From positions 85,808,001-85,872,000 of the forward strand of contig OZ260664.1 in NCBI GenBank assembly GCA_965285935.1: 64,000 nucleotides of DNA. The letters run 5' to 3'. Positions 37,429 through 57,919 of the stretch are shown in pieces. How positions within the stretch are numbered: the first letter of the stretch is position 1; each line of letters starts with the position of its first letter. The notes under the pieces are model-generated. The model was not told the DNA's origin, did not search any database, and saw only the letters and a list, made by a program, of their open reading frames with translations. Source of the DNA: Ophelia neglecta (taxonomy: Eukaryota). Position numbers and translations under genes: made by a program.

Positions 37429-39016
37429 ACGCTGGATCTAGATCGTCCGGTGTCGCGAGTTGCTCAAAGTAGAGTTTCCACGCATTGCACAGTTCATTGG
37501 GATCACGCACTAAAGATCCTCCGATATCTTTAATAGGTACGACTTTCGGCCCCTGTGGCGACCCTCGTCGTTTATTCACCATATGCCAGTAATATCGCTG
37601 ATCGATCTCAGCTGATTTTAAGATTTTTTCCTGCTCTTTCATTTCTTCAGCGTTTTCTGCCGTCCTACGCAGCCTTCTATATTCCCTTTTGGCTTCCTTG
37701 TAAGCCAGTCTCAGTGGATTTTCAATATCCCTGGGCCGGCCTGCTTTTATCCAGTGCGATCTCGCTTCTAGATTGTGTCTTTTGGCCTGGCTTAACTTCG
37801 AACTCCAATATGGTTTGAGATATGGCCGGTACCGCGATTGTGGTATCGATGATCGGCCACACAGCCTCATTGTTTGGGTAATGTCCTCCACATATTTATC
37901 TAGAGCCGCTTCCTGCACCACCTGCACGCTATCGGAGATAGTAGTAGGTATTTGGTCTAAGTATCTAGACATGACATTCGCCAGTTTGGTTTGCAGATTA
38001 GCTGTGTATGCCCGCTGGATTTCCAGCCCATCTGGCCTGTGCCATGCTAGTTTTGCTGGATTGGACGACACTTTCGCCGTACACGGGAACAGGTTGATGT
38101 TAACGGTTATGGACAAAGGTAAATGGTCAGATGTATTTAAACAATCATCATCTATTACCTTACAGCTTAAGATATGTTCTAACAAGACATCAGATACTAA
38201 GATATGATCCACATACGAGCTTGCCATGGTTCCCGTATGGCAATAAGTGTAAGTAGGACCACTCCCTATCACCATATCAGCAATGCATAAACCATAGCTT
38301 TCACATAACATTGATACTTTCTGGGCGTTATTCGTAGTTTTACCAATCCCCCTTTGTCCAAATTCTGGACCAAAATGGCAATTAAGATCACCCAAAAGTA
38401 TCACATTATTATTTTCTGCCCTTTCTTCAATTACTTCATACAATTGATCTAACACAATATCAAAAGAATCAATCACACAAGAAGAGTGAGGTAAATATAC
38501 ACCGACAATACTGAGATTATTTACATTCAGAGATATAATACGGTCTGTATATATTTTACAATTTTCTACATTCGATATACTTTTCCTCCAAAAAATACAC
38601 AATCCTCCATGTCCCAGTATAGTACCATATTTACACGAGTTTAAGTGTCTACTTGACACTGCCATACTATGAAATTCATGGGAAATATTGGAGAGTTTAT
38701 ATAACTCGCAATCAAACAACCAATGTTCTGTTACAACCAGAATATCACTCTGGTTTAGCAGTTTCGTAATATATTCAGATTTACCGTGTACTCCATGAGC
38801 ATTCCAGCATGTTACTCTCAACAGACACAAAGACATAATTATACTTAGCGATATTACAATACACATGACAGGTATGAACCAGTACAGCACCTTCCTGTTA
38901 ATATCTGTTATTATCAAAGTCTTCATTATGGTTATTGCTATTGGTCGCCATATTCGTGCCAGTCCTGTATTTACGTCCATCTCTTGCATACTCTGACCTA
39001 CGGACGTAATCACCAT
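37397..39016 (-). CDS. LINE ORF2 N-terminal part (APE-like endonuclease), ends at a +1 frameshift
   Basis: Endonuclease/exonuclease/phosphatase motifs RVTCWNAHG, DILVVTEHWL, ILLGDLNCHFG, SYVDHILVS, SDHLP. Confidence 0.88.
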   Translation of the reverse strand: MVITSVGQSMQEMDVNTGLARIWRPIAITIMKTLIITDINRKVLYWFIPVMCIVISLSIIMSLCLLRVTCWNAHGVHGKSEYITKLLNQSDILVVTEHWLFDCELYKLSNISHEFHSMAVSSRHLNSCKYGTILGHGGLCIFWRKSISNVENCKIYTDRIISLNVNNLSIVGVYLPHSSCVIDSFDIVLDQLYEVIEERAENNNVILLGDLNCHFGPEFGQRGIGKTTNNAQKVSMLCESYGLCIADMVIGSGPTYTYCHTGTMASSYVDHILVSDVLLEHILSCKVIDDDCLNTSDHLPLSITVNINLFPCTAKVSSNPAKLAWHRPDGLEIQRAYTANLQTKLANVMSRYLDQIPTTISDSVQVVQEAALDKYVEDITQTMRLCGRSSIPQSRYRPYLKPYWSSKLSQAKRHNLEARSHWIKAGRPRDIENPLRLAYKEAKREYRRLRRTAENAEEMKEQEKILKSAEIDQRYYWHMVNKRRGSPQGPKVVPIKDIGGSLVRDPNELCNAWKLYFEQLATPDDLDPAYDNEFRKAGY

Positions 39017-42000
39017 TGTAGTGGTCGTCTATTTGAGTCTGGTCTGACCACCGCTTATTTCGCGCTTTACGGCCTCCTGGCGAGGTTGTTGACCACTCCC
39101 GACAGGAGATCCTTTCTGGCCATACCCCGTCTTCCATTGCCATCTCAACCATAGACTCTGGCACTGATATTTTACATCCAACATGGCTCTTTGAGCGATG
39201 ATTCCTTACCACATGAGCTTTTATTATGTTAATACCTTTCGAATAGGCATATTCCTTTACACAATCGGCGATTTCGGCGTCGCTCTAATCTTCTATCACA
39301 AAGTGGCGGAGGTAGAGAACTTTCATCTGTTGCACAAGGGCCCCTTTTAGGGTCATTTTTCCCTTGCTCTTCCCGGTCTTTCTCCTAGGTCTTACTTCCA
39401 TCCACCCATCGTTGTTTTCTGACGCGATCTCGTTAAATTGTTTTCGCGCTCCGTTTATCAGCAAGTGATACAAATGTACATGAGGAATATTCATAGGACA
39501 GAAAACACTTTCAAATATGTACTGCAAATATCAAAAGAAACCAATATTGAGTGTTTAAACAGATTCTACCGACAAGTTATTTGTCAGATTCTGTATTCTC
39601 ACGTTTATTGTCTTTGTTTTCAGTTTTGTGTGCGTAAACGTGAAAATCTATATGATGTTAGGGGTATTGAGTATAGGCATAGCTATGTACGGTGGACTTG
39701 AGTTTGGTGTCAAGAGGAGAAAAGGTGGAGCTTAATACGATATAGACAAACCCTATCCACCTCTTTCCAAGCTGACATGTACATAGATAGAGACTACAAA
39801 CTCTGTATATACGAGCTATACAGATATATACCAGTGTACCATATATTTCACTCCGCATAATATTACAGTAATGTCCATGACAGCCATTTTTGTCATGATA
39901 TTTGTTTTCGATATTCTGATATATATGTCATCAAACTGCAATAAAACTAAATTTTCATACATATATTTATAATTTCAAAAAAGCATTAAAATATGGGTAT
40001 GCATACCGGTCAAATACCATAAATTACCCAATTGAAAGTCGTACTTGTGTCTGAGCCCAATAGCTAGCGATCTAGGTTCACTCGTATATCTGTTGTGTTA
40101 AGGCTAATAGTAGTGTGAGTCTTCTCCCATTGGTACTTGTTTTTGTTTACATAGTAAGGTCCCTGCCTTCATGTCGAAAGTTTTTGAAACAGGCAACCAT
40201 ATGGAACTAGAAATAGTTAAAACGATTTGGTAGGTCCAAGATGTAAAGGTTCTACCTGTCAGAGCACATTCTTGCACCACAGATCTCGGCTTTGTAATAG
40301 CCTTCCTTCCGACTTGAAAATGGTGTCAATTATAGATTTTAAGTAAACCACCAAAATGTATTTGCCTGAAAATGTGTATTTCTACTTTCCATTTAAATTA
40401 TAGATGCATACCAGGAATACACTAATTTTCAATTCAAATCAATAAACTAATTCAACTCATTGTCAGTCATCATACAATCGCCGACCGAACCTATCATCAG
40501 TATAAAAAGTAGCTAGTAACAATGTGGCAACGCTTCTATTAGTGTTGAATTATCATCTAGCAAAATAGTAGTGGGATAAATCGTGCTATTTTTATGCATA
40601 TTTCAAAACAGGTGTTTGATGCAAACAGGGAAGACTCGATACGTTATTTTACACAAGAAAATTCCCTCATATAACACAGATACATCACGACACCACTCGA
40701 AACCACTTGTCGAACGAAGTAGGTTTATATTACAAAGGGAAATTTCAATCAGCATGATCAGGTGACAAGCCTGCTTAATTTTATTGCAATACACGTATAA
40801 ATTTCAATTGAGGAAATTCCCTTTCTTTCCAGGAAAGTATTGGTAACTATGTGAGGTCGCTGATGAGAATTTCCGATGATTGTTTATGTCATGTCACGTT
40901 TAATGCTGCGAAAAAAATAGTCAATTGGCAGATTAAATGCGAAGTATTGGTCCTAGGCTCGAGCATAATCACTTGTATGAATGTTAATAATAATGAAAAT
41001 GGTGACGTATTGATTATGAGTGCCCGAAAGGTACAATGATTAACCTAAGGCCAGTTTTATATTTAGGGTCTCACTTTACGAGTCTTAATTCTTTATCCAT
41101 ATTTTTGTCCAAACAAAATATTTCCAGTTCAGTTTTAGGCTAGTGTTTAAACACGGATGTGCGGAGGCTTGGCGGAGGAGGAGGTTATGGATATTGCTAG
41201 CAAAGAAGTCGCTGGCAACGCTAGGGCTAAAGCTGAGGGTTAATGTTAGGGTTAGGCAAAGGTTAAGGACAGGTGTTAATAGGTCTCGTTTTGTGTACTT
41301 ATCTCGGGATTCACCAAGGTAAAGCTTTGTGCTTTCGCTTTTAATCAGAAGCCCAGGGTTAAAACCTCACTGTATGCATATCGATTGAATGAGTTTATCA
41401 CCAATGAGCGGGCACTGATGTCGGCACGCTATTTTAGATCCTCTCTGCGCCTGAGAAAATATTTCAGAATATTAAAAAGTGTATTTTATGAAAATTTATG
41501 TGAAATTATATCTGGTACTCGTTCAAGGAGGGGGTGGGGGTAGGGATCTGGGTAGGTGGTAGTATTTGCTTATACTCCTAGGCCATTTGTGTTTCAGACA
41601 TTAACAATTTAATATCGTCTGTTATATAGGCAATATGTATAGAAAAATACAGGCAGTAATTCCAATAATACAATGGAGTCCTTGGCTCGGCATACTTTGC
41701 AGTATTACCAGTAATACAATGGGGTTCTCAGTTCGCAAAATCAAATCATTCCATGTTTTAAATCCTGTCTACACCTCTCGTCCCACAAAAATACATTATC
41801 ATTAGGTTGGTTAACACTCATGTCATAATGTTTGCAATGTAAAAGATAATTCAACATTTTGAAGCACTCGTTGACGGTTACAATAATAACGAAGCAGTCA
41901 ATACAATTCTGTACAATTATTTATTATAAATTCAATAATATTAAAAAGAATTGCTTTGTATATTTACATGCCTGACATTCTCCACTAGTTGTGTTTTAGC

Positions 42001-42395
42001 ATGGATTTTTTTTCACACTTATTAATTTATATGCATTTTTATTGTAATATTTAGCCACTGTCTCGATTATAATAAAACAGAATATATTAGAAACATAAAA
42101 CCAATACAAGCAATGGCAATTGCTTCATCCACGACAAACGAACAATGGATAACATTGATTGCACAGCTGTTTCTCACTATATTTCTGAAGCATGCACAAC
42201 TAATAAAGAAGTTTTTTACAATGAGTAATGATTTAAATTTGTATTTTAAATGAGCTTGCCAACAATTGAATTTACTAACATGAAAATTGATTTATTTATT
42301 TATAATTAAATACATTGATTCTTCGTAGGCGGTTTCTTACACTAATACCCATCCAAACTTCAGGTGATTATTTTCGACGGAGATATGCTTCCATT

Positions 42396-45300
42396 TTATT
42401 TTGTTTTCTTTTTTTTCCTGCAAGCGCAATATAATATAACACCAATAATTATTAATCCTCCGAGGATTATCAACGCACCATGCCACCAAGACAGTATTGG
42501 TTTGGTATCTGAAAGTATACAAAAATATATATAAAAGTTTACCAATGGTATGAAAAAAAGCCACACCATAGGCTGAACGTACATAGTTTCCAAAACTCAA
42601 TACGGGGAAACTTTATCAAGGCACACATACAATGCCCTTAAACAAATATTCTGCCTGTGCTTAGTACTTAGGTAGGAATGAATATCGGGAGGAAGAATAA
42701 TGTCCAAGAAGTTTGCAAGGAATGGCTTTAATTTGGATCAAAACATAATTAGTAAACACGATTGCTCAATATTAGATTTTGCCAAGTATGTTAAATGTTA
42801 TGCTGCCTACCTACCTAGTATCACAATAAACTCCTTTCGCAAGATATTTCCTCCATCAATATTTGCCGCTTCACAAGTGAACGTTTCGACTTCCTGTTCT
42901 GTTTTAGTCAACAGCAAAGAACTGGTGGTTCTGATCAACTCCGGACGTTCAGTACAATTCTCATTTCGAGTCGCGTAGTCATTCTGTTATTCAAGAAAAG
43001 TAAGATCTGAGTTATAGAGTGATATTTATCCTGTAGGAAGCTATCTTGATTCAGAGCGTCACGCGTTCCATTTCAATGTCTAATATCCCGATTATAATGA
43101 TTTTGCTGAGAACACGCTATGTTTGGTGTTTTACTTTAATCTTTATTACCTTGCAATCTTTATCTATATATATTTTTTATGGTTATTCCGTTTACCGGCT
43201 CAGTTAAGCCAATTCAATTTACAATGAACAAATATCGCAAACTATGTCTAAATATATCACGCCATCAGCATCCTGCAATGCACAAGTAAGCTCGTCAGAA
43301 TAAGTTATAATACGACCGTTGCATTATGTTATCTGAATTTTGTGTGTAGGATAGTTTATGTAATGGGTATCCCTCCCCCCCCCCCCTTCGATGCAAATTT
43401 GGAAGCATAATTTAATCGTTGTCAGTCGTCATTTGTTTCCAAACAACTAACCTCTTACCCTATTCTTAAAGAAGAGGTGATAGTTGTACATTTATATTAC
43501 CACAAACAAATCAGGATGAACACAACCAGCCATCGATACTGATAATACAACTACATGAAAATTTACAATTATTACTTCTATAGTAGTTGCTCGCCACTCC
43601 TTAGATAGCCAGAATGGTTGAAATACAGAAACAGTGATACATGTAATTGATAAGTCGCAAGTGGTTGTATGAGGACGAAAGCCTCTTGTATTGTACCTGA
43701 GGTATAGGAAATCGAGTTCCATTGCTCCACGAAATGTTTGGTGAAGGGTATCCGCAGTCCGATTGGCAAGTCAAATTGAATACTTGACCTGCCTTAACCT
43801 CCAACGGCACAGTTGTATCAGGCCAAGTGGTTATACTGCTGATTTCAACTGAATACAAAGTTTAAAGTACTGGTTAATAACGAACAACAGCTTTTGATTG
43901 ACCAGATCAAAATTCAAATTATTGAAAGTAGATGATTTATATAGATTAATTTGATGAAATTTTATTTCAAATATAATAATAATGACCTGCCACAATATTT
44001 TAGATTTTTCCCAATTTATCAAAGTTTCTTCAATTCACAATTACATAAAAAGAAATAGCAACAAATATCACGCAGCACGTACAACTCATTTGTTTGGCGA
44101 CCGATGCATTAAATGTTACACCAGGCCTCATATTGGATAAAGTTCACACACAGTCTTAATGGCAACTCAACTTATATAAAGAATAACATACTGGAAGAGT
44201 AAGTGTATACATGCTCTGTAATAAATTTGTAAAGGTTGATTTCCTTCATGCATCATGCATTTCTTCTTTAATTAAATACATTTCCATCCTCTCATTACTA
44301 ATTACATATAATTTTAGGTTTTGACATGATTTAGATTTTGTCATGTGTCCCGGAACCCTGCTTGGGACCTTGTTTGTTAATTGCTTTTCCCTGACAGCTC
44401 CCGGCTGGCGCTAGGCATTGGCCCATTGGGCTTTGACCCACTGTGGGGCCGATGCTTCTTGCTGTCAATAAGATTGTATATAATATCAACTGGTTAGCTG
44501 CTGCTTTGTTTGCCTGGTCTATATATGTACATGTGCTTTATGATTGACGAATATACTATTCCGACTGCCTTAACTGCCTTGGCTGTGCATAAAATCGACT
44601 GCCTTTACTGCTGTTTTGTTTGTATATGTATGCCTGGTCTATGTATGTGACTGTGCTACACCATTGACGGTTATACTATTTTGACTGCCGTTAACTGCTG
44701 TTTTACATGCGCTTGTATATATTATCTTGTTATGGTGCCAATTGTCTTATGTTTAAATACACCAGTCGACTTTTCCTTTCGGTGGTTCTCACGATAGCGT
44801 TCTTCTATAGAACGTAGTGGTATCTCCCAGACCAGTAAAATGTGTTACATGTTTGTTTCCTGTTTGTCTTATAAGAGTAATCTAGCTTACTATAGTAAGA
44901 ACTGTATTCACCATGTAATGTTTGTTTTGTTCTCTAGTCTAAATAAAATAACCTGAATCTGATTATTGGGAACGAGATTCTGAATTACACTGTAGCTTTA
45001 TTTGAATAATAAAACACTTATGATGAATGTAGCTGGCTGAGTGAATGTATTCATTATGCCCAAACCCTCATTTTTCGATTTCGGGGATACAACGCAGGGA
45101 TCTGCGATAGAGCTGACCGACTTAGTTTTATTTTGGTTGAATCGAACACTTACCGTACACGTCAATGTAGACCGAACTGCGCAAAGTGTCCACATCACAT
45201 TGCCATACACCGTTCCAAGTGGCATTCCGATATGCTTGTATTAGAAGTGTGCAGTTACTACTAAGCCCAGGGGCGAGCGTACAATTAGTACAACTAGCCT

Positions 45301-46795
45301 GCTTCACGACATCGGAAAGTCCATTCACATGACATCCATGCGCAACATTCCTATTGAAAACAATAACAGCGAAAGATGAATTAAACAGTGCTGTCATGAT
45401 TATTGATTACTAGAAAATGACTGCTTTGAAAACATAGTGCATTCCAAATAATAATGTTATGAAGGTATCCCATTTCAAACAAGAACTGGTCAATCTAACA
45501 CGGAGCCAGATGATAACTCGCACAGCTAGCGTTCATTAATCCACATTAGGAGAAAGATATTTCAAACCCTTACTTAGCGGAACCCAGGGGAAATCCAGGG
45601 CACACAAGTGATAACACATAATCAAACCAAAAAGTAAAGCCATCGAGGTCAGGCCAACCAAGAAAAACCTTGAAAGTGACATGGCAATTTCCATCAAAAC
45701 AAAATGAGAGAACTAGCAATCTTACTAAAACTGAAAGATAGTGTTTGTTGTAGCGCAACAGGGCCGAGGCGAGGAGGGGGGGGGGGGGAGGAGGCAATAT
45801 TAAGACCAATGATCAGAGCATAATATTTAATGGCCATTTGTCTACCACACTTGGAGTAACATTCCTGACACCGCTTTACAGTAGGGTCGAATGTCTATCA
45901 TGCACGAAAGTTGGTGTAATTAACCCGGCCATTTAATAACGTACACTTTCCATACTACTAATTAATAATAATCACTAGTAATTGTTTAGGTGATCCAAAG
46001 TTTCTGATATGCATGTTAAGTTAGCGCTGTTTACCCAGACGTCCTCATATCCAACATACTTCATACAGCTAACTATAAGTACATTTATAACCACCTTAAT
46101 TTATTTTGTCCAAAAATGCAAAATACCTATGGAAGAAGCCTCCCTACACCTTCCAATGTGTACCGTTGGGTATTCCAGAACTAGGTTTAGATCCTACGCT
46201 TGGAGGTTTAAAATAAATAGTGGAAGTCTGACAGATATTTACGCTGTGTATCAAATGTGTATATTTTTTAGATGCATTTCTTTCATAATGACCCCGTTGT
46301 CAAAGCTACGGGGACAACCCCCTGCCTAAAATAAAAGTCCCCGCCCTCCTTTTTTTACTAATGACATTACCTTCGGATACCATATTCTATCATAATAGCA
46401 ACTTCGAGTCGTCGAGCTACAAAATATGTTATCGCTTCTGCGATACAATACATATTTTAAGCATCGTTTTTATGGTAAGGTCAATGATAGTTGGAACTTA
46501 CTTGGACGAAGGTGGTTTAAACCACTGTTTATCAAAAAGAGAAGGACCAGTGCAGGTAAGAAGAACCATATCCCCCTCCATTGGTGTACTGTCGTTTGTG
46601 GTGATAACCACGGACTGGATCACTGAAATAAAGTCAAGATAGCGGACGCGACTGATCACAAACATTTAATTAATGAAAACAAATTTCATCATTCTTGAGA
46701 CGACACGCGGTGATTAAGAATGTTTTAAAGAAGGAATGATAACCTGGCAATGAGATCAAAAGGAATGATATCCGCTTTATTATTATAGCCTGCAT
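42396..46795 (-). CDS. Gene B: two-Ig-domain single-pass membrane protein with a 7-residue basic tail, 267 aa, 6 exons
   Basis: Exons 46795-46744 (signal MQAIIIKRISFLLISLP), 46622-46502 plus 45350-45154 (V-like Ig: EGDMVLLTC...QWFK...GVWQC), 43848-43697 plus 42983-42815 (C2-like Ig: FNLTCQSDCGYPSPNISW...FTCEAAN), 42508-42396 (TM ALIILGGLIIIGVILYCAC then RKKKKTK*). All junctions are GT-AG with compatible phases. Confidence 0.85.
44511..44700 (+). repeat. Diverged direct duplication (about 70 bp, 120-bp period) inside a probable TE remnant in a gene B intron
   Basis: TGCCTGGTCTATATATGTACATGTGCT...TATACTATTCCGACTGCCTTAACTGC at 44511 recurs as TGCCTGGTCTATGTATGTGACTGTGCT...TATACTATTTTGACTGCCGTTAACTGC at 44631. 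Confidence 0.65.
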
Positions 46796-47029
46796 TCTTT
46801 AATGTCCTGATGAACATACAGGTCTTGATCTACTCTTTCGCTCTATGCAGGTGTGCATAGTGCCTGAATAATGTTGAACTGTCGACTATTGCGCGTTGCG
46901 TTCTTGGGCGCGCATTTGGATAAACAGCCTGAACGTTATTTTGAAATCTCTAAACAGAAATAGTTGAGAACTAACTGTTTGTAGAAGATAATATTACTTC
47001 TCAATCTGTTCTCTCTTGACAGGATAACC
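46796..47029. promoter_or_regulatory. Candidate bidirectional promoter / 5'UTR region between head-to-head genes B and C
   Basis: Only 234 bp separate the two divergent start codons. Promoter activity is inferred from geometry, not from a recognised motif. Confidence 0.5.
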
Positions 47030-50000
47030 ATGATTAACGCGCTCGCCTGTTTGATGTGTCTATTGAGATTACTAAGTTCAGCGGGTAAGACACAACTTTC
47101 AAATTCATTATTATATATCGAGCCAAAGAAAATTCTATATGGGGCTATATGTCTCATTCGTTATTCAATTCTAGGTATTATACATTAATCAATTCTATCA
47201 TTAACTTAACTGCAGCAAGCTCGGTCGGCGTCGTATGGAGCTCAGAGTATTATGTCTTGGTGGGAGACAACATCAGCCTATCTTGCTCTATGAACATACA
47301 AGGCGCTTATCGCAAAGCCCAGTGGAATACAGACGCTGTAAATAATCAAGCCTGTTCAATGTGTCATAATCCCGATTCACAATACATCACAGCTATGGGA
47401 AATCCGTGTGATACAAGTCTTAGATACCGAGACGGGGGTTGTGATGGCAATAGAACCTGGATCACCGGGACACTGGATGTGACTATAGACCGATCAGACA
47501 TCAGGGAATGGGTGTGTGTAGGACCTTCGGTCCAAAATCAGGCATCAGAGTCGCTCACAATCCACGAATTCAGTAAGTTTATCTATTGCATGTTTTTTAT
47601 TTAGGATGCATATATAATGGTTGTATGCCATAAATTGCCCTGCCGAATAAACCGCGGTATTTGCATGACCAGCCATGGAATGTAATGTAAGTCCGATTTC
47701 TTCTCCATCTCGAATAAGAATAATACGAGACAGATGTAAAGAACAAAGGGTTGAGATTTCGTTTTGCCAATTTTGAATATATGCTAAAGGATCGTACATT
47801 GCATACAAAGGCGATCGTTTAAACACACATTCGCCTCCTTACTGGGCTCAGTGCTGTCCACTTGCAGAAGAAGTTAGTAGTTTGAAACTTAACTTGCTTT
47901 GGGCATAAATCACTGCCAGCATGTGAGCCTGCGAGCATCTAACCAGTGATATAGCCCATAGTTATAGGTAAGAGGTATGGCTCATTCAAGCAACAGTTAC
48001 ACCGTTATGCTAAAGGCTGGTTTTTAATTTCATCATTAAAATTGTTTAACTAAAATGCAAAATCGGTCAGCTGGGTTTGATTGGAATAGGTTCATGCTGT
48101 CTTAAACAATTCCTGATAACGCAATTCTCTTAAGTCAAATCATAAACGATAAGAACTTTTTTTTTCCAATTTTTTTTGGAATGTTCACCAGGTTCACCCC
48201 ACCTAAAATTCCCAAAAGTCTGTTCTTAAAGCTGTAAGTAAAATTTTGAGTGTGTATAAAGTGACCCCATTCGGTTAAAAATTTGAAAAGCCCTCTCCAC
48301 CCAATATGAGTGGTATAATCCCATATCGGGAAAAAAATATATATGCGCTTCAAATTGACAAGGGCGAAAAAGGGCGTACGCAACGATTTTAAGAAAATAT
48401 TTTAATGCTCTGGACGGTAAACTATAATAACTTAGTAATTCATTGCCGACTCACACAGAATATACAGTTCTAGGGAACTGAACTGTATCATTACCTTTTT
48501 ACATACGAATGCCCTGAGAACTAGGTGTTATTTGGAACATGCCATTCAGTTTGGCATAGAAGTTCTCTGTCAGCAATTTTGCTTAGACTGTGGTACTGTT
48601 ATTTGAAATGTATTAACTTACCAAACATATATATGTACATGGCTTCATTGTAGTGTCAACAAGGAAAGACGTGCAATTGATTTTAATTGAGCTTATATTT
48701 CCTGGCTATCAATCCTGTTTAACTTCTCTGAACCCAAATTCAAAGTATAATGATAAAGGATGTACTGGTATGATTTTAATCGGCGAGGCAGGGGAGGGTT
48801 GGAAGGAAGGGTGTAGAAAGAGCATAAAAGTTTTGGGGCCCAGATTCCTGCTCCCGAGAGATGTTTTGCACTCAATGAGTAAAGACAAAGTTATCTTTAA
48901 ATGCATTTTGCACTTAAAAGGTTACATTTCTCCACATTGAGTGATATTTATGATTTGAGACACAATTTTCTCTGAATTAATGTGACAATATCCATAATGA
49001 AACGCCATTATATTTAGTAGCTGCGTAAAGCTATTAAATATTATATGTGGAAAAACACCAATTAACTAAAACACTTCCGGGAGTACGCCAAGCAGGTTGA
49101 TTGTTGGCGGGTTATACTCAGAAATGATTTATATCATTTAAGGAAGTTATGTTGCCGCTGTTCTATGTCAAGGATCATCAAGAATGCGGAAAGTTTGCTC
49201 TCACACTATAAGTGTTTTCCTCATATAAATAAAATACCCGTCTCTGGTACACCACTGTAAGATTAAAAAAATATACGTTATGTGTACCGTGTAATCGTGG
49301 TAAGTGGCTTTTTTACTTTGCGTATCGCATCAACAGGGCAGATATGAATGGAAAATGGATCAAGACGCATGACATCTCTACCCCACCCACCAGTCTCAAC
49401 GCGTAACACGTGGCAGCGAGTTCTGAATGTACTAATTACAATGGTATGCTGCCCACTTAGACCAGTAGTAATGTAATTCGAGACAGTCCGGACTGTCGGG
49501 AAAGAAACATTACGAAATTTATACAATAAAACCTTTATTGAGTCACTGATGCGACTAATATCTTGCCTAGAAATGTCAAGGCAACGTTGTTTAAATTATG
49601 AGATAAAAGCATCATTGCTACCGAATCCTTGGTTCGACCACCCATGAGCGAAGCCACAAGATAAGAGCATTTTGTTTGAGAGAATTAAATGCCTAAGCAC
49701 AAAATGTCATGTTGCCCTGGACGTCCCAACACGCATTCACGCCTAAATCTAGCCATGATTTATTTTTATTTACAGAAGCGACGTCTACTCCATCAATTGA
49801 CAACTACACCTCCAACGCCGTGCAGGTAGTGTCTGTAAGAGAAAATCAACAAAAGTCATTCACCTGTCGTGTACAGGGTGGCGCTCCTGTGCCAGTTATC
49901 ACATGGTACCAGACCCCAAACACTAACATCACAGACAGCCCCCAGCAGGACTACGGCAATGGCGGATACTCCCTACTGTTGGATATAAACATGACCCGAC

Positions 50001-53000
50001 AAAATGACGGGGTAGTGATTTACTGTGGTGTCCACCAGCCAGGGTCATCGCATTCTCAACTTTCCCAGTCTCCAAAACTTACAGCTAACGTTCTCTGTAT
50101 GTATTCAAAACCTTCCTCATCATTAAGACAACAACTTATAAAACGAAAGACTAGTGAATACCCGACTGAAAAATAATGAATAGATGACATTGCATTAAAT
50201 GGTGCACCAAGCTTTGGGGATGGAGGGGGAGTGGGGTATGGTGGGGGTCTTATTATAATGTCTATGACGCGGAAAAGTGTACGCATTAGAGCACCGCTGC
50301 CTAAACGGGGGTATAATGTGTCAGCCACACAGTATCCATTGACTGTGTCAATGGCGAGTTATGAATCACTGAATTTCATTGATATAACCTTGCAAGTCAT
50401 ATAGGATTAATCAAATTTAGTAACTGACACGCAATGGTGATCACAATTATTCAAAAACATTTGAACGGTTTGTTAGGAGTATGGTCGATGGAGTTTGGGT
50501 ACAGTTAATACTCACTTTGTAGACCAATGCATTAGTCAAAGCATTATGGTGGACAAATCATAGGCTTTTTTATTCATCAACTATGCTCATAATCGGTGCA
50601 AACTATAATCAAAAACTGTAAATAAAGCTCTTAAGTATCATACTAATAATGAAAATTACGAAATTAAGATTAGACTTATTAACAAATATTTATATATCGA
50701 GAGTTTAGGTAAAATCTCGTGCTCTCTCTAATTGTTTTATTTAAAGTGCACCTCAAGAGGGTGAGAACGATTTTCTGTGGTCCAATACATTTCACCGTTT
50801 CATACCTGATTTTGTTTTACTGTACCACGCTGCTTGTAGACAAACCAGATCCGGCAGTGGCCACTCAGGCTAATGTCGTCGTTACACTGGGAGACACTAA
50901 TGTGTCGCTGAGTTGCCAGGCTAACAGTCAGTGGCCAGGGAACCCTCTACCGACCTTTACCTGGACCAGGACTGGGGGCGGCTGGAGCGATAACGGACAT
51001 ACTATCCACGTGTCCGTACTGAATCCGTGTATAGACACGTATTATTGTACTCCTTCTAACAGTGAAGGTTTGGGAACACCGGCTAATGTGACCCTTGAGA
51101 TTTTAGGTGAGAACAAGGAAGAATTATTGGTGTAACCGACCATACTAATATCATGGTAACAGAACTTAATATGTCGTTTTGTCTTAAAGCGCCCACCGTA
51201 ACAAGCACGACAATCCAAAGCACTGTTGTAGCTGTAAACACCGACGATAGCTGGATGGTGAGATGTGGCTTTAAGGGACTACCTGCGCCTACTGTCAGCG
51301 TTACAGGACCCGGAATTGGTAATATATATCAGGTGGTCCATGGATCTCCCAGCCTCACCGTGGATTGTTATCAGGAATCTTCCGTCATCTTGAAATGGAA
51401 GGCGGTAGACCAAAACACCAGGAAGGCCGGAAGTGCGCGAATTACATGTACAGGAAGAAATGGTGTTGGTTCAGTACCGGGTAGTCATCACTTCAACATC
51501 GACGTGCAATGTAAATACCTCTTGTTATACAAGAACTTGGCGAGAAATGTTATTTGCTCTTCTGGTTTATATCGAAACGACCCCAGTAGAGGAAAGAAAT
51601 ATACTTATTTTTTCAATGTAAAGCAATAGAATAATTGACTTATTAGATAAACCAGGAGCAGCATCCTCTGAATCGTTGTCACCTGTTAGTGTGCACCAGA
51701 CGGCGACACTGCACTGTTTTATGGCTGGAGACACTGAAGGAAACCCAATATCCAAATTCAACTGGACACGGAAAAATAATTCTACATGGCAGGTTTTAAA
51801 CAATAATGGGAGCCTGCTTCTTCCAATAACAGACATGACTTTTGAAGACGAATACTACTGTACTCCATGGAATATCCGCGGAGCAGGGCAGAAGGCGACG
51901 ATCCAACTTACATTTAAAGGTTAGAGATTGGGCTACCTGAAGAAGATTAACTATAAAAGTCCGCCAGTCTGGTGCTTTTAGATCACCAGGCATATAGTTC
52001 GAACATTCTATAGTTAATGTATTTAGCTACCCAAGGACTATACTGCAGTTGCTCTAGTAACTAAAAAACACTTGCGCCGGATAAATATTTTTAGCTATCT
52101 TAATTTATCGCTAGTTGATACATCGAATTTATGTCTATACCTCATAATGTAGAATGGGCGTTACGATATTATTATGTTCTTTTGAGAAAATCTTCCACAG
52201 GCACTCCATTGGCTGTCATAATAGGAGGAACAATCGCGGCTGTTATATTTGCAGCCACCATAGTCATCGTTTTAGTTGTGCTGCGCAAATATAGGAAAGG
52301 AAGTCAAAATGGTAAGTTATGATTTTGTATTGATCCAAACATCATTTCGATCCTACTGCCTTTCGAATCAGTCATATTTTCGTTTTCGATATGTGTATGT
52401 CCATTTCATGCGTTATTGGTCTTGGCAGATTATCTAGAACCAGTAAAAAGACCATGCGACGACATCGATGGCATTGACTCCGTCTACAGCGTCATCGATG
52501 ATATTGATGTGATCCCCACCAACCTCCATCCGGATGCCCAGGATAACGTATATTTGACCATGTCATTTTTATATCAATCCGGCATTTTTTTCTCTGTAGC
52601 GTTGAACCTGTAATGCTTAAGTGATGCTAGTGGATTTATTTTATATCATGTTAACCCAAATAAACATTGGATTGAGTGAACTGTTTTAGAGCACAGTATC
52701 CTGTCGCAAAGGGAATTTCGCTGTTTTCCCTCGCCCGAAAATAATAATTGACACCTAGATACGTGTTTTTGAAAGGTATCCAAATAATACGTCTAAAAAG
52801 GCTTAACCATTGAAAAGGAATGATGTGTGGATTCCGATAATCCAACTACCAACAGTTCTATATCTGCTCAAGTAGATATACAATGCCAATAGGCTGAAAC
52901 ATCTGTCCAGATAATCGGAAACCAGTCGGATGTCTGATTGGGCGGTCCTGTTAAATTAATTATTAACATATTCAAATAGTTCCATTTTCTACACCTTGAA

Positions 53001-56000
53001 ATTGTTTGCCATGGAGAACAAGTTCCTAGAACGGTTTTTGACTAACTTCTGTTCCTGCTAACACTGAACAAGAAGAGCCATATTCCAGGGAGAGCCACAA
53101 TAGCCATTGTCAGGGTAAAATAATGGAGCAGACTTTATGATTTTTTTTTCAGTCCGCGGGGATTGCAGTACATTGTTGTAAATAAAGTTGTTCGTCTGTC
53201 AATTTTCCAATTTTCTTCTTTTGGACACTAATCTTCTCATTGGAAAATGACGACACTCATTTTGATGACCCTCACTTTCATAATAACAAATAATATAATT
53301 GATTGAATAGCTAGCGTCTCTATATTCATCAGAATATATAAAAGAGCAAACCTATAATTAGTACCCCCAAAAAATGAAAGGATGAGGTTTTTTTTATAAT
53401 AAATGAAGATTTTGGTAGGATTGTATTTTATTGTAAAACGTATGAAGCGAATATGGACTGGCAGATGAATCTATGTATTCAAACAATTCAGTTGGCGCAA
53501 TGACCTGTTGTCATTATTTGTATAATGTGCTTCGAAAGTTAATTTTTTATTAAATATATTCTCGCTTTACAATGCCCCCCATGATAGCAAAATATATACA
53601 AAAAAGTGTCTTAATGATTCATCCTATTCATATAATAAGCAGATTGTCAAGAACACTTCAGCTGATTACGACTTATTGGACAAGGAAGCTAATAGACTGT
53701 CCAGGAATTTTTACGCCACCCTAGAGAACAAGGATAACAGTGTGGTACGCCACTTATACTATTATGTCATATATCATACTATTAACACGAATAGCACCAG
53801 TGTTTTCGAATTATCATATGTCATTCCATCAGGAATGAAATTGAATTTTCATGTCATAGGAGAATTTCAATTTTGTGTAACAGGATGCGCCTGCGGATTC
53901 TTTTATCGTCCCACCTGGCGCGTTCAGCTTGGGGAAACATTTACGTAAAGGAGCTTTCAAAGTCATTTGGTCAAGTGACAACTATAGTTCGAATGCTGCT
54001 GTTGTGAACCGAATAAATAGTGCGGTTTGATATAATTTCATCTCTAAACAATATTGGCCAGCAATGATACTGACATTTTTTAAGGCTAGCCGTACCCCAT
54101 TCACTTTCGCATTTTTCGTTACTTAATAAAACACAAGTTAAAGGGTTTAATCATTCACTTCGCCTGCGTATTCACGAAACACACAATACATTAAAATGAA
54201 TTACAAATGTGCCCAAACACACGGATGTTGTCCTCAATCATCGGAAATATAACTTTCCCAACAAGCCGACGATCCACAAAATTATAAAACCTATATGATA
54301 CGTAAATTAACTACATAATCTAATGTATTTCCCATGTTTCTTTATTCAGACAACCCGAGTGATGAGGACTACTTAATAGCATTTAATGGTTTGAAAGCAT
54401 TGTTAAAATGTGAATCCTCACTTTTTGTCAGTCGGTTAATCGGATTCACTATTACAAAGGGTATTGATAATGTTATTCATCTGCATTTTTTTCTACTTTA
54501 ATTTTGGTGGTTGAAGTTCGGTTCAAGAAAATTGTTTCCCTTTTCTTTCGTGCAGAGTTTCTATATGTTATGTCGGAATTCGCAAGCGAAGGTAGCCTTC
54601 ACAAGTTTGTCAAAACAGCACCGAATGTGTCCTCGTACGCATCCCATATACTGAAATGGTCAGGGAACATTGCTCAAGCCTTTGATTACCTTCATTCCGA
54701 ATCCGTAAGTATATTCAGGTAAATCATGTTGACTTATAATCACGGTATCTTGTGGCGCACTGGTATCTTTAATACATTTAAATTCTTAATAATATGTATT
54801 GTGTCCAAACTTTAAAAATAATAGTAATAAATGGTCATAGATAGTTTTCTTGGGCGGATGGGTACGGCTATACTATTATAAAATCTGTTTATGTAAATAC
54901 AAACTATCATCTATAAAAACATGTATTCTATTGTAGCAACCATTCCTCCATCCATGTTTATCATTATATCAAATACTGTTGGATTCTCATCTACGAGCCA
55001 AACTAAAAGGATTTTGGCTGGCTCAAGATGTGGTTGCTAAATATGCCAAGAAAGACGAGGTAAGGATCGAAATTTAGCGTCTGCATTCTTGTACCCCCCC
55101 CCCCTCAAGGTATTTCCCCTTCCCCACGTTATTTCCCTTCCCCGGCTGTGTCGAATAGCTAGACGAAAAGAGTTGAGGTAAATTGGTTACTAATCATCGG
55201 AGCCTATTTTTTTTGTATACGCTGTTTAATTTGAATATACACGCTATGTGTCAGGTTATTCCTATCATGTTTGTGTTTTTAGATCACAAAATGGCCAGTC
55301 CGTCACCTGCCCCCTGAAACTTTACTCTATGGTGTATACAACCAAGCATCCGACGTCTGGGCATACGGTATCCTGATTTGGCAAATATATAACAACGGTA
55401 AGACGGCATAATGTTTAATGCGAATTAAACAGGTCTGCGTTTGAATTTCAATAGGACGGATTAGAAAACCTACTTATATTCAAACGTAAACGGAGGAAGG
55501 TCATTCATATTAGCGCCAACTTAGAAAATATATGTGCGTGCGTGTAGTAGGCAGACCAAATGAATATGTATGCCCGTTTTAACAAATCTGCTGTATAACA
55601 ATAAGACGACATTCACAAGCGCATTTATTTACGAATATGTATTGGAATAACGGAAACTCATTCCTTTTTGGCATACTGGAAAACCTGATACGAAATTCGA
55701 AGGAAATACGAGATACACAGATACGAAAAATTAAGATTGAGTTGGATTATGACAGGGTAAGGGGTAGGGTTAAGCTAGCAACCTAACTAAACCATAACTT
55801 ACTTTATCCTTCACCCTAACCCTAACCTAGTCCATATGGCTACGTTTTAAACACCTCGTATCTCGTATCTGCGTCTCGTATCTGGTATTTCGTATCAGCT
55901 TTTCCAGTATGCCTTCCTTTTTTTATTGGTGAACTACAGTGTGATGTATTTATTTAGGGAGTATTCCTTATCATGCCACTAAAGAAAGTGAAGTTGTCAA

Positions 56001-56294
56001 GGCAATATGCGATGGTGATGTAATGGATATGGGAGAAGGGTTTCCAATGTCATTGTAAGTGTTCTACGAATTGTCAATAGTTCTGACCACATTTATGTCA
56101 CAATATGTTGTATTCAAATGTTGCTTAGATGTACGTGGGACAACGCCCTGAGAACGGGAGCTGCTATTAAATTTGGCTCTTTTTCTTATAGTGAAATGTA
56201 TATTCGAGTTTGTTGGAGATACGAGCAGGACAAAAGACCGAGTTTTTCTAAAATAACGAACAAATTGAAGTCGCTGACCTACAGAATGAAATGA
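47030..56294 (+). CDS. Gene C: Ig receptor tyrosine-kinase-like pseudokinase (SP, 5 Ig, TM, ITIM-like and ITAM-like motifs, dead TK domain), about 920 aa, 16 coding exons; paralog of gene A
   Basis: Exons 47030-47084 (signal MINALACLMCLLRLLSSA), 47216-47572 (V-type Ig), 49776-50096, 50840-51106, 51190-51510, 51647-51919 (Ig), 52201-52311 (TM LAVIIGGTIAAVIFAATIVIVLVVL), 52429-52547, 53643-53744 (juxtamembrane), 53884-54019, 54350-54460, 54556-54704, 54937-55059, 55283-55397, 55958-56054, 56192-56294 (kinase: NIAQAFDYLH, PPET, SDVWAYGILIWQI, CWRYEQDKRPSF). Cytoplasmic intron positions and phases match gene A. Confidence 0.9.
53884..56294 (+). CDS. Tyrosine-kinase-fold (pseudokinase) domain of gene C, 7 exons
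   Basis: LGKHLRKGAFKVIW (Gly loop missing), AVVN (beta3 Lys lost), NGLKA (alphaC Glu lost), FLHPCLSLYQILL, AKLKGFW, WPVRHLPPET, DVWAYG, CWRYEQDKRPSF. Confidence 0.9.
55670..55913. mobile_element. MITE (non-autonomous DNA transposon, Mutator/MULE-like) with 9-bp TSD in an intron of gene C
   Basis: TIRs GGCATACTGGAAAACCTGATACGAAAT and ATTTCGTATCAGCTTTTCCAGTATGCC (1 mismatch in 27). Perfect TTCCTTTTT duplication at 55661-55669 and 55914-55922. Internal inverted GATACGA and telomere-like TAGGGT/ACCCTA repeats. Confidence 0.88.
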
Positions 56295-57919
56295 AAACAA
56301 ATGTGAAGCTTGCAAGCACGCAATTTCAGGATCAGACTTTTTTAAAGCAATCAGCAGGATATCATATGTCCGTATTCGTGCATATAAGTGTTCCATTTAT
56401 GTATCATACATGGTAACATCGTTTTTTTTTCTATAAAACAAACACAGTGCTTTAAATTACCATGTGGCTCATACTTTATTCTCGGTGTGTGAATTATATT
56501 TTGCTGTGTTATATATCTCACAATCTTAGTACCAATTTTATATTCATACATATTCACTTCCTGGAACGTCCGGTCATTGCATATTCAGATATGCATACAT
56601 TGGAGTGACATTTAAAGTAATTATTTACCTTTTTCGAGTATGATCAGTTTTTATCTGGGCACAGTGTCAACGTTGTTTATTTAGGGTCGCATTATATGTT
56701 CATTAATTGTCGTATTTAATTATTCATTGTTTACTTCTTATCATGCTAGTGCAAATGCAGAAATAATGTTGACATTGTAATATTTCAGCATGAATATATC
56801 CATAAAGTTGGATACAAAAATTATATTCGTCTGCAAGAAAATTGTAGTATTTGACTGTGATATGAGCTGAAGGCTCTTACAGAAATATTCCTACATTAAT
56901 GCTGTACCCTTCATATATGCGTACTAATTGCTACGTCGATGAAGATGCGGAGGTCGTGCACATTTTATTCTTTACGCCAATGTATACTTCCTAAATATAC
57001 ACAACATTTATTGTATTATGTTGATGTGGTGACAAATAATAGATTGTATTTTTGCTGGTTTAATAGTAATAGTAATAGATAATAAAGTAATAGATAATAG
57101 CCTTTTACTAAGCTATTACAAAGGGTACTTTTGTCGTTTTACTTGAGCATTTAATATTTGGCTAATTAAACCAACCAATTAATTGTCAAAGTAATGGAAG
57201 GCATTAAACATGTTTGGAAAATCTCTCACCTGTACTGATACTGTACAAAATATGATTTTGCCTATACCAAATTAATTTCTCCCCAAAAATGTCTGTATTT
57301 ATTAACATGCTTCACACAATAAAATCATGCTTTCCTAATAGAGTGTATTTTAGGGGTCTAAAAATGTTATTGCAAGGCAAACTCTCCCCTTCATGGTGTT
57401 AACCAGGCTGTTTATCGAGAACTGTCTTGCCATGAGACTGTCTGAATGTATTCAATCTAACAGTGGTCTGTGTTTTGTTTATAATCCTTTAACAATGGTG
57501 TACTGTCTCAATTGGATTTAACCAGACTATCACAGTAGCAGAGTTGAATTATTTTTTGTCCCTTGAGATGGCCAAGGTTGGAGTCACTGACAACCTACCC
57601 CTGTCTCCCTGATTGCGGTTAAAGTCACTTAAAGATGGCTAGGATTATCCTGATTGGCTTGTTAGTATTTTAGCCAATTCATTCATATATACCAACGAAT
57701 ACTGAGATTCTTAATCAGTGTCCTGAAGTTTTCCCAACTACAAGATCAACATGTCTGTGTGGGCACACTTTGATGCCATTCAAAAATGTCCTGTAATAAC
57801 TTTAAATGAGACCTTTTTTTAAGTTAGACTTATTATGTGTGTCAAGAGTTTTGTATCTTTGTTCTTTGGCAAAATAAAGTTTCCAAATCTGAACAGTTAT
57901 ATGCGTAAATTTATTGTGA

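What the first reader, a model, noticed from the sequence alone, without database searches (positions are those of the whole stretch)
46502..47084. Very tight head-to-head pairing of gene B and gene C (ATGs 235 bp apart)
The two signal-peptide exons diverge from a 234-bp gap. A good acceptor (ctctcttgacag, ending 47022) sits 7 bp before the gene C ATG. This implies an upstream non-coding exon within the gap (possible donor near 46851) or overlapping gene B antisense (CAG/GTAAG near 46556). The layout implies co-regulation and almost no recombination between the two tip domains, as expected for co-evolving ligand-receptor pairs such as tgrB1/tgrC1. I found no equivalent partner in front of gene A.
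Basis: partly seen in the sequence, partly recalled or inferred. Interest (0 to 1): 0.78.

Follow-up and report, generated by a model that had tools for sequence, protein, structure and literature searches.

The report
Divergent Ig-receptor gene pair, four copies
Two cell-surface immunoglobulin-domain genes of a worm-like invertebrate sit head-to-head with only 234 bases between their start codons; this layout is real and kept in all four copies in the genome, but the tests possible here do not show that the two proteins co-evolve as a matched ligand-receptor pair.

Summary
Gene B (minus strand, ATG 46795) and gene C (plus strand, ATG 47030) diverge from a 234-bp gap.

- **B:** a six-exon gene for a small membrane protein: signal peptide, V-like tip, C2 Ig, TM and a 7-residue tail.
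- **C:** a multi-Ig receptor with a kinase-like tail.
- **Recurrence:** B-type tip exons occur exactly four times in the 762-Mb genome, each head-to-head with a C-type receptor. Three copies lie in 122-kb tandem repeats. One is an old copy (dS about 1) with 217 bp between the ATGs.
- **Shared element:** a rare GCGCGC core sits mid-gap in all four pairs, which fits a shared bidirectional promoter.
- **Against the tgrB1/tgrC1 reading:**
  - An exchange breakpoint lies inside the gap (46966-47065).
  - Two copies have C tips that are 117/118 identical beside B tips that differ at 12 residues.
  - Two C-type receptors have no B.
  - B and C tips show no detectable sequence kinship.
- **Upstream exon:** the AG before C's ATG is kept in two of four lineages, and both proposed donors are unconserved.
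- **Limits:** no RNA data could be obtained.

The parts
46744..46795 (-). Gene B exon 1: ATG at 46795, signal peptide of 17 codons + 1 nt, phase-1 donor CAG|GTTATC
   Evidence: ATG, peptide and donor GT conserved in P1 and P3 and in P4 (donor CAG|GTAAT).
46502..46622 (-). Gene B exon 2: first half of the V-like tip domain (A-C strands, with the B-strand Cys and C-strand Trp). It ends in phase 2 at AA|GTAAGT.
   Evidence: 62% identical to P4; dN/dS 0.18.
45154..45350 (-). Gene B exon 3: second half of the tip domain (Cys-rich insert, E-G strands, F-strand W-x-C)
   Evidence: Four copies in the genome. Pairwise dN/dS among recent copies ranges from 0.85 to 7.9 (about 1.2 when I pool the three pairs). 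It is 0.51 against P4.
43697..43848 (-). Gene B exon 4: first half of the second (C2-type) Ig domain
   Evidence: Pfam Ig_3 E=1.2e-5 and C2-set hits on the enclosing ORF. 98-100% identical in P1/P3.
42815..42983 (-). Gene B exon 5: second half of the C2 Ig domain
42396..42508 (-). Gene B exon 6: transmembrane helix without a charged residue, a 7-residue basic tail, and stop TAA at 42398-42396
46796..47029 (.). Intergenic gap between the two ATGs (234 bp): the presumed shared bidirectional promoter
   Evidence: 93-97% identical among recent copies. The P4 gap is 216 bp (ATGs 217 bp apart) and unalignable except for a central GC core. No Rfam match.
46889..46915 (.). GC-rich core holding the palindromic hexamer GCGCGC (46908-46913), 113 and 122 bp from the two ATGs
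   Evidence: GCGCGC occurs only twice in the 64-kb window. It is the mid-gap element in W, P1, P3 and P4 (L003:4984) and is absent near the ATG of the unpaired S4 and S5 genes.
47011..47022 (+). Pyrimidine run plus CAG, 7 nt before C's ATG. It is acceptor-like; its function is unresolved.
   Evidence: Identical in W, P1 and P3. A similar motif with AG occurs in S5. P4 and S4 have the pyrimidine run but no AG.
47030..47084 (+). Gene C exon 1: ATG, signal peptide (18 codons + 1 nt), donor G|GTAAGA
47216..47572 (+). Gene C exon 2: the complete tip domain, a V-set Ig fold with a four-Cys insert
   Evidence: - No Pfam hit.
- AF2 model has pLDDT 77; best PDB matches are CD96 D1, nectin-1 D1, TIGIT and NITR.
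- Six copies in the genome.
- One weak hit among 1.84 billion representative proteins.
49776..52311 (+). Gene C exons 3-7, with approximate bounds: 49776-50096, 50840-51106, 51190-51510, 51647-51919 (four Ig exons, all phase 1) and 52201-52311 (TM)
   Evidence: Pfam C2-set_2 at 1.4e-10, plus Ig_2 and Ig_3. Splice sites read. Conserved in P1, P3, P4, S4 and S5.
54504..56294 (+). Gene C kinase-like region (not the subject of this finding)
   Evidence: Pfam PK_Tyr_Ser-Thr E=7.5e-5, below the cut-off. Weak PDB sequence matches to TK/TKL kinases.

Best explanation
B and C are two real, selected genes for type-I membrane proteins of the immunoglobulin superfamily. They are transcribed away from each other from a compact shared intergenic region of about 220-235 bp.

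The module 'B - gap - C' arose once. It is older than a synonymous divergence of about 1 and has since been copied as a block into four pairs on one chromosome.

The most likely mechanism is inferred, not shown. A bidirectional promoter centred on a GC-rich GCGCGC element drives both genes in the same cells. A non-signalling V+C2 surface protein (B, 7-residue tail) would then be displayed together with a signalling receptor (C: V tip, four more Ig domains, tyrosine motifs, dead kinase).

B would then act as a surface partner of C-type receptors, binding V domain to V domain in cis or in trans, as nectin/PVR-type V domains do. The pair is not a tightly locked, co-evolving unit. Gene C has been exchanged between copies without B, and some C-type receptors work without any B.
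For: **Gene models**
-. ORFs and all GT/AG sites of B are kept in three recent copies.
- Against the old copy, dN/dS is 0.18 and 0.51 for the B tip exons and 0.43 for the C tip. dS is about 1 for all three, so the two genes have the same age and both are under selection.

**Recurrence**
- B-type tips occur four times and are always paired.
- ATG spacing is 235 bp against 217 bp. Meanwhile B intron 2 changed from 1151 to about 150 nt, and C intron 2 from 2.2 to 6.1 kb.

**Promoter element**
- GCGCGC lies mid-gap in all four pairs. From the counts I estimate a background of about 1 per 24 kb, giving about a 1% chance of one falling in the P4 gap.
- It is absent upstream of the unpaired S4 and S5 genes.

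**Fold and architecture**
- The C tip is a V-set fold nearest to CD96, nectin, TIGIT and NITR.
- B architecture is read.
Against: - TSSs, co-expression and even expression of B are inferred.
- An AG acceptor-like site sits 7 nt before C's ATG, and another sits 11 nt before B's ATG. Either could mean that the real TSSs lie elsewhere and the gap is not the promoter.
- Block duplication alone preserves the layout, and only two independent lineages exist.
- Short introns near the gap also kept their size (121 vs 87 nt, 131 vs 111 nt), so conserved spacing is only moderate evidence.
- No binding data exist.
- B's tip could not be folded, because it is split over two exons and joined models were not submitted.
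Confidence: 0.6

Rival explanations
1. This is the first reader's reading: a tgrB1/tgrC1-like self-recognition pair. B is a polymorphic ligand and C its matched receptor. Tight linkage keeps matching tip alleles together, and the two tips co-evolve.
For: [quoted passage not shown]
- Tips are the fastest-evolving parts. C tips are 54-58% identical among genes whose stalks plus introns are 89-93% identical at nucleotide level.
- B exon 3 has pairwise dN/dS from 0.85 to 7.9 in recent copies, with changes clustered in the BC and FG loops.
- B never occurs without C.
- The V-set fold is of the nectin/TIGIT type, which binds V to V.
Against: - The exchange breakpoint lies inside the gap, so B and C of one pair have different histories.
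- P1 and P3 have C tips that are 117/118 identical, beside B tips differing at 12 residues, with no matched change.
- S4 and S5 lack B.
- B exon 3 dN/dS is not significantly above 1 (about 19 non-synonymous against 5 synonymous changes when I pool the counts).
- No polymorphism or binding data exist.
- The domains are Ig, not the IPT/TIG domains of Tgr proteins.
Confidence: 0.15
2. The two genes are neighbours by descent only. They are functionally unrelated IgSF genes of a duplicating cluster, and the layout persists because duplications copy blocks. C, and perhaps B, starts from a distant non-coding exon or is trans-spliced at the AG just before its ATG, so the gap is not a shared promoter.
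For: - Acceptor-like pyrimidine run plus AG sits 7 nt before C's ATG (W, P1, P3, S5) and 11 nt before B's ATG (W, P1, P3).
- Three of the four pairs are recent repeats.
- B and C tips share no detectable similarity (hhalign probability 0.4% and 2.2%).
- C-type genes function without B (S4, S5).
Against: - The AG is missing in P4 and S4, and both candidate donors are unconserved.
- The rare GC core is retained mid-gap across dS of about 1 and is absent in the unpaired genes.
- No insertion has entered the gap in any copy, while neighbouring long introns changed several-fold.
- B has never been separated from C.
- As far as I know, spliced-leader trans-splicing is not established for annelids (own knowledge, not tested).
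Confidence: 0.2
3. A paired-receptor or decoy model. B is a tail-less relative of C that shares C's ligand and either competes with it or signals through an adaptor, as in vertebrate paired activating/inhibitory receptors.
For: - A short-tailed and a long-tailed IgSF gene lie side by side in an expanded receptor cluster.
Against: - B and C tips are not similar, and paired receptors have near-identical ectodomains.
- B's TM helix has no charged residue for adaptor pairing.
- B's tip is split by a phase-2 intron while C's is one exon.
Confidence: 0.05

Closest known systems
tgrB1/tgrC1 allorecognition pair of Dictyostelium
   Same: - Two single-pass membrane proteins with Ig-like-fold ectodomains.
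- They are encoded by diverging genes that share one short promoter.
- The pairs are duplicated within the locus, and copies recombine (10.1101/2025.08.01.668227).
   Different: - There is no homology: these are Ig domains, not IPT/TIG.
- Matched co-variation of partners is not seen among the copies here.
- Polymorphism, binding and function are unknown.
- One partner here carries a dead kinase and tyrosine motifs.
Nectin / PVR with TIGIT / CD96 V-domain partners (vertebrates)
   Same: - C's tip model is a V-set fold whose best PDB matches are CD96 D1, nectin-1 D1, nectin-2 D1 and TIGIT.
- B has the V + C2 + TM + short-tail build that I recall for small IgSF ligands such as CD80/CD86 or the CD2 family (own knowledge).
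   Different: - Sequence identity is only 9-19%.
- There is no Pfam V-set hit.
- The tip has an extra four-Cys insert.
- No evidence of binding exists.
- To my knowledge the vertebrate genes are not arranged head-to-head.
Hydractinia Alr allorecognition gene complex (own knowledge, not tested here)
   Same: A large cluster of lineage-specific IgSF single-pass receptors. They have a divergent V-like tip that carries specificity, and ITAM/ITIM-like tails.
   Different: - Alr proteins bind homophilically and are not described as divergent ligand-receptor pairs.
- They have no kinase-like domain.
- No sequence relation was found.
Ordinary bidirectional gene pairs with a shared GC-rich promoter
   Same: Head-to-head orientation, well under 1 kb between the starts, and a central GC-rich palindromic element.
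   Different: In my recollection such pairs usually join unrelated housekeeping genes. Here both partners are fast-evolving surface IgSF genes, and the pair is amplified as a unit.
Other head-to-head Ig receptor cassette in this genome (scan note s1-730835)
   Same: A duplicated head-to-head pair of orphan IgSF surface genes. There, too, nothing shows the neighbours act as a pair.
   Different: The gene types differ (type II Ig receptor plus Ig-ankyrin receptor) and it lies on another piece of the genome. I did not examine it.

Membership tests
Bidirectional (divergent) gene pair with shared promoter | Two genes on opposite strands, 5' ends facing, less than about 1 kb apart | tested here: met
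   ATGs at 46795 (-) and 47030 (+), 235 bp apart; 217 bp in the old copy.
Bidirectional (divergent) gene pair with shared promoter | Both transcription starts lie inside the intergenic region | not testable with these tools
AG sites just before both ATGs leave upstream exons possible.
Bidirectional (divergent) gene pair with shared promoter | Correlated expression of the two genes | not testable with these tools
   No RNA data.
Bidirectional (divergent) gene pair with shared promoter | Conserved regulatory element between the two starts | tested here: met
   GCGCGC core mid-gap in all four pairs. It occurs only twice in the 64-kb window and is absent upstream of the unpaired S4 and S5 genes.
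tgrB1/tgrC1-type co-evolving recognition pair | Paired diverging genes for two membrane proteins sharing one promoter | tested here: met
   Layout and TM segments; definition taken.
tgrB1/tgrC1-type co-evolving recognition pair | Matched change of the two partners (co-phylogeny) | tested here: not met
   - P1 and P3 have C tips 117/118 identical, while their B tips differ at 12 residues.
- Tree topology switches inside the gap.
- Only paralogues were compared, not alleles.
tgrB1/tgrC1-type co-evolving recognition pair | High allelic polymorphism of both genes | not testable with these tools
   No population data or reads.
tgrB1/tgrC1-type co-evolving recognition pair | Allele-specific heterophilic binding of the two products | not testable with these tools
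   Needs an experiment. Only single-chain prediction was available.
tgrB1/tgrC1-type co-evolving recognition pair | Sequence homology to Tgr proteins (IPT/TIG domains) | tested here: not met
   Pfam gives only Ig-clan families: C2-set_2, Ig_2, Ig_3, I-set.
V-set immunoglobulin domain (C tip) | V-type Ig fold | tested here: met
   AF2 model with pLDDT 77, pTM 0.71 and nine strands. There are 39 PDB matches at E<=1e-3, all V domains. The ESM Atlas neighbours are V-set clusters and unnamed mollusc clusters.
V-set immunoglobulin domain (C tip) | Match to the Pfam V-set profile | tested here: not met
   No Ig family at E<=0.1 for window:47218-47571.
Paired activating/inhibitory receptors | Near-identical ectodomains on a long-tailed and a short-tailed gene | tested here: not met
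   hhalign of B tip exons against the C tip profile gives probability 0.4% and 2.2%.
Paired activating/inhibitory receptors | Charged residue in the TM helix of the short-tailed partner | tested here: not met
   B's TM segment has no K, R, D or E.

The most novel reading that the evidence does not exclude
The four B-C modules are an animal analogue of the Dictyostelium tgrB/C system. This would be a self or partner-recognition locus in a lophotrochozoan. A displayed V-domain protein and a V-domain receptor with a dead-kinase/ITAM tail would be fired from one promoter. New specificities would be made by swapping whole tip or gene modules between tandem copies, and the breakpoint in the gap would be one such event.
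Probability: 0.12. Interest if true: 0.8.

Novelty: new variant of a known kind. Interest (0 to 1): 0.45.

Why it matters
Lophotrochozoan surface-recognition systems are, to my knowledge, almost unknown at the molecular level. My two literature searches for a comparable system gave 0 and 7 papers; none of those titles or abstracts describes one, and I did not open them.

This locus offers a compact, testable unit:
- a 234-bp region that probably drives two surface Ig genes;
- a tail-less V+C2 protein that never occurs without a signalling receptor;
- tip domains that are orphans by sequence, with one weak hit in 1.84 billion proteins.

If B binds C, the four pairs, together with the two natural 'C without B' genes, would form a ready-made series for studying how specificity evolves in a duplicating receptor cluster. 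If it does not, the locus is simply a well-documented bidirectional pair inside an expanding IgSF family.

Tried and rejected
2. **Word-indexed protein search** with the C tip exon found nothing in the allowed length range.
3. **Big HMM search** with the six-tip profile gave one weak hit (P0001, E=3e-4).
   - Its contig (L010, an ENA metagenome assembly) carries a distant tip relative.
   - No recognisable B partner lies on it.
   - Cross-species conservation of the pair could therefore not be tested.
4. **B as an inverted partial copy of C.** Rejected for lack of evidence.
   - hhalign finds no similarity.
   - The exon structures differ.
   - The shared Cys-rich insert with a CxxC-like motif remains only a lead.
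5. **Positive selection on the B tip.**
   - Pairwise dN/dS in exon 3 reaches 7.9 for W-P3 (12.5 non-synonymous against 0.5 synonymous).
   - Pooled over the three copies it is about 1.2, which is not significant.
   - I therefore call it 'neutral-like or diversifying' only.
6. **Partners of another type next to more distant tip relatives.** None was found next to L015, L016 or gene A.
7. **Other scans.** An Rfam scan of the gap gave nothing. A loose pyrimidine-TTG-ATG pattern was not enriched.
8. **Joined spliced models.** Everything was done exon by exon, so B's tip has no structure model.
Full report
**1. What is there**

The window is part of an intron-rich, roughly 38% GC animal genome. 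It is G000 contig C7, 85,808,001-85,872,000, in an assembly of 762 Mb. Earlier notes of this scan call the organism a worm-like lophotrochozoan or annelid.

*Gene B (minus strand).* I read a six-exon gene:
- exon 1, 46795-46744: ATG and a 17-residue signal peptide, phase 1;
- exon 2, 46622-46502;
- exon 3, 45350-45154;
- exon 4, 43848-43697;
- exon 5, 42983-42815;
- exon 6, 42508-42399, followed by TAA.

Exons 2 and 3 together encode a V-like tip domain. It has a B-strand Cys, a C-strand Trp, a Cys-rich insert and an F-strand W-x-C. Exons 4 and 5 encode a C2-type Ig domain (Pfam Ig_3 at 1.2e-5, plus C2-set). Exon 6 encodes an uncharged TM helix and a 7-residue basic tail. The product is about 270 residues.

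*Gene C (plus strand).* It starts at ATG 47030.
- Exon 1 (47030-47084) is the signal peptide.
- Exon 2 (47216-47572) is a complete tip domain.
- Four phase-1 Ig exons, a TM exon and a kinase-like region follow.

The gap between the ATGs is 46796-47029, 234 bp. The finding's coordinates and its motif positions are exact.

**2. Are the genes real, and does the pairing recur?**

Whole-genome six-frame searches, with single exons and then with profiles, find B-type tip exons exactly four times. C-type tips occur six times.

Every B lies head-to-head with a C:
- P1 at C7:85.731/85.733 Mb;
- the window copy (W);
- P3 at 85.975/85.977 Mb;
- P4 at 86.585/86.586 Mb.

P1, W and P3 are spaced 122,050 and 122,044 bp apart. 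They are 88-99% identical at nucleotide level, introns included. They are therefore recent tandem repeats.

P4 is old. Its tips are 51-62% identical to W's, and dS is 0.94-1.29 for B exons 2 and 3 and for C exon 2. The two genes therefore diverged at the same time, as one block. dN/dS against P4 is 0.18, 0.51 and 0.43, so both are maintained by selection.

In P4 the B ATG (L003:4883, minus) and the C ATG (L003:5100) are 217 bp apart. All of B's splice sites and reading frames are intact in P1 and P3. P4's B has exons 1-5, but its TM exon was not resolved.

The two remaining C-type genes have no B-like exon and no Ig-like ORF within about 6 kb upstream. These are S4 (C7:86,822,118, minus) and S5 (C7:86,726,484, minus). 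The same is true of two more distant tip relatives and of gene A.

**3. The gap**

Among the recent copies the gap is 93-97% identical. Against P4 it is unalignable except for a central GC-rich core.

The palindromic hexamer GCGCGC occurs only twice in the 64-kb window. From the counts I estimate a background of about 1 per 24 kb in the roughly 194 kb examined. Yet it sits mid-gap in all four pairs. In W it is at 46908, which is 113 and 122 bp from the two ATGs. In P4 it is 101 and 116 bp from them. It is absent near the ATGs of S4 and S5. That is what a shared core element of a bidirectional promoter would look like.

The spacing is kept while long introns changed several-fold. Short introns also kept their size, so this argument is only moderate.

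*The acceptor-like site.* CTCTCTTGACAG lies 7 nt before C's ATG. It is identical in W, P1 and P3, and S5 has a similar site with AG. P4 and S4 have only the pyrimidine run, without AG.
- The proposed donor at 46851 is CT in P1.
- The proposed donor near 46556 is the antisense of B's L-L-T-C codons and is absent in P4.
- I also noticed a similar pyrimidine-AG site 11 nt before B's ATG in W, P1 and P3, but not in P4.

Without transcripts, the question of upstream non-coding exons stays open.

**4. Test of 'no recombination, co-evolving tips'**

I aligned 16 kb of W, P1 and P3 and scored which copy is the odd one at each variable site.

| Region | W odd | P1 odd | P3 odd | Closest pair |
|---|---|---|---|---|
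| 45500-46999 (B 5' half and gap) | 24 | 110 | 37 | W-P3, 95-96% identical |
| 47000-56999 (all of gene C) | 478 | 45 | 45 | P1-P3, 98-99.6% identical |

The switch lies between 46966 and 47065, that is, in the last 64 bp of the gap or in C exon 1. Beyond about 57000 the pattern changes again. B's 3' half (42000-44000) is 98-100% identical in all three copies.

So the array is a mosaic made by non-allelic exchange, and one exchange tract covers gene C without B. As a result, P1 and P3 have C tips differing at 1 of 118 residues next to B tips differing at 12 of about 105.

If some of these 'copies' were in fact uncollapsed haplotypes, the same data would mean allelic recombination between B and C. 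Either way, the claim of negligible recombination between the tips is not supported.

In fairness, tgrB/C pairs of Dictyostelium also duplicate and recombine. The result therefore argues against strict co-inheritance, not against every recognition model.

**5. Tip dynamics**

Tips are the most divergent parts. P4, S4 and S5 share stalk exons and introns at 89-93% nucleotide identity, yet their tips are only 54-58% identical at protein level. Tip modules are therefore decoupled from a concertedly evolving stalk.

In the recent copies, B exon 3 changes at a neutral-like rate.
- Pairwise dN/dS is 0.85, 0.93 and 7.9; pooled by hand it is about 1.2, which is not significant.
- The replacements cluster in the BC and FG loops and around a CxxC-like motif, which also carries an in-frame 3-nt indel.
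- For comparison, C exon 2 and B exon 2 show 0.28-0.41.

**6. What the domains are**

- C's tip has no Pfam hit.
- A six-sequence profile finds one weak relative among 1.84 billion representative proteins.
- An AF2 model (pLDDT 77) is a V-set fold. Its closest matches are CD96 D1, nectin D1, TIGIT, NITR and PD-1.
- ESM Atlas neighbours are unnamed mollusc clusters and V-set clusters.
- B's tip exons show no significant profile similarity to C's tip. I therefore do not claim that B derives from C.

**7. Verdict**

A shared bidirectional promoter is the best-supported mechanism, at about 0.6. The ligand-receptor co-evolution reading is possible but weakened, at about 0.15. A purely historical neighbourhood, with transcription starts elsewhere, remains a serious rival at about 0.2.

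**8. Limits**

- There are no RNA or population data.
- No orthologous loci from other species were available.
- The literature searches gave 0 and 7 papers. None of those titles or abstracts describes this family or pair, and I did not open them.

Noticed in passing
G000:C7:85.73-85.98 Mb (window plus L001/L006 and L002/L007): There are three tandem repeats of about 122 kb (offsets 122,050 and 122,044 bp). Their identity is a mosaic of 75-100% that changes in blocks, pointing to repeated non-allelic exchange. Some copies could also be uncollapsed haplotypes placed in tandem by the assembly.
   Followed up: partly
L009+L003+L008 (P4), L013+L011+L004 (S4), L014+L012+L005 (S5): The three C-type genes share stalk Ig exons and the introns between them at 89-93% nucleotide identity. 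Their tip exons are only 54-58% identical at protein level, and the upstream DNA is unalignable. This suggests a concertedly evolving stalk with swapped or ancient tip modules. S4 and S5 also carry two extra Ig exons.
   Followed up: partly
window 45284-45292 (B exon 3) and the matching sites in L001, L002: An in-frame 3-nt indel lies inside B's Cys motif: C-T-N-C in W against C-T-A-N-C in P1 and P3. P4 has a different Cys spacing there.
   Followed up: no
window 46807-46820 (minus strand): A second acceptor-like site (pyrimidine run plus CAG) lies 11 nt before B's ATG, mirroring the one before C's ATG. It is kept in P1 and P3 and absent in P4. Sites so close to both ATGs resemble trans-splice acceptors, but nothing here shows that the organism trans-splices.
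   Followed up: partly
window 35290-39016 (minus strand): Two long ORFs (712 and 539 aa) look like the reverse-transcriptase and endonuclease parts of a LINE-type retrotransposon. They lie between gene A and gene B.
   Followed up: no
window 30375-33879 (plus strand): Several ORFs with multi-pass membrane character lie head-to-head with gene A at several kb. By eye they might be a transporter of the unc-93/MFS kind; they were not scanned. This is gene A's actual upstream neighbour, and it is not an Ig gene.
   Followed up: no
L010:9693-10198 (ENA metagenome assembly ERZ25069296, contig of 124 kb): This was the only hit of the C-tip profile outside this genome: a 27-31% identical half-domain on a eukaryote-like contig. 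A methyltransferase-like ORF and an RVT_1 ORF lie nearby, and there is no B-like partner.
   Followed up: partly
L015:7148-7624 (+) and L016:2568-2939 (-): Two distant tip relatives (E=1.6e-5 and 1.6e-3 to the profile) have the signal peptide and tip in one exon and no divergent Ig neighbour.
   Followed up: partly
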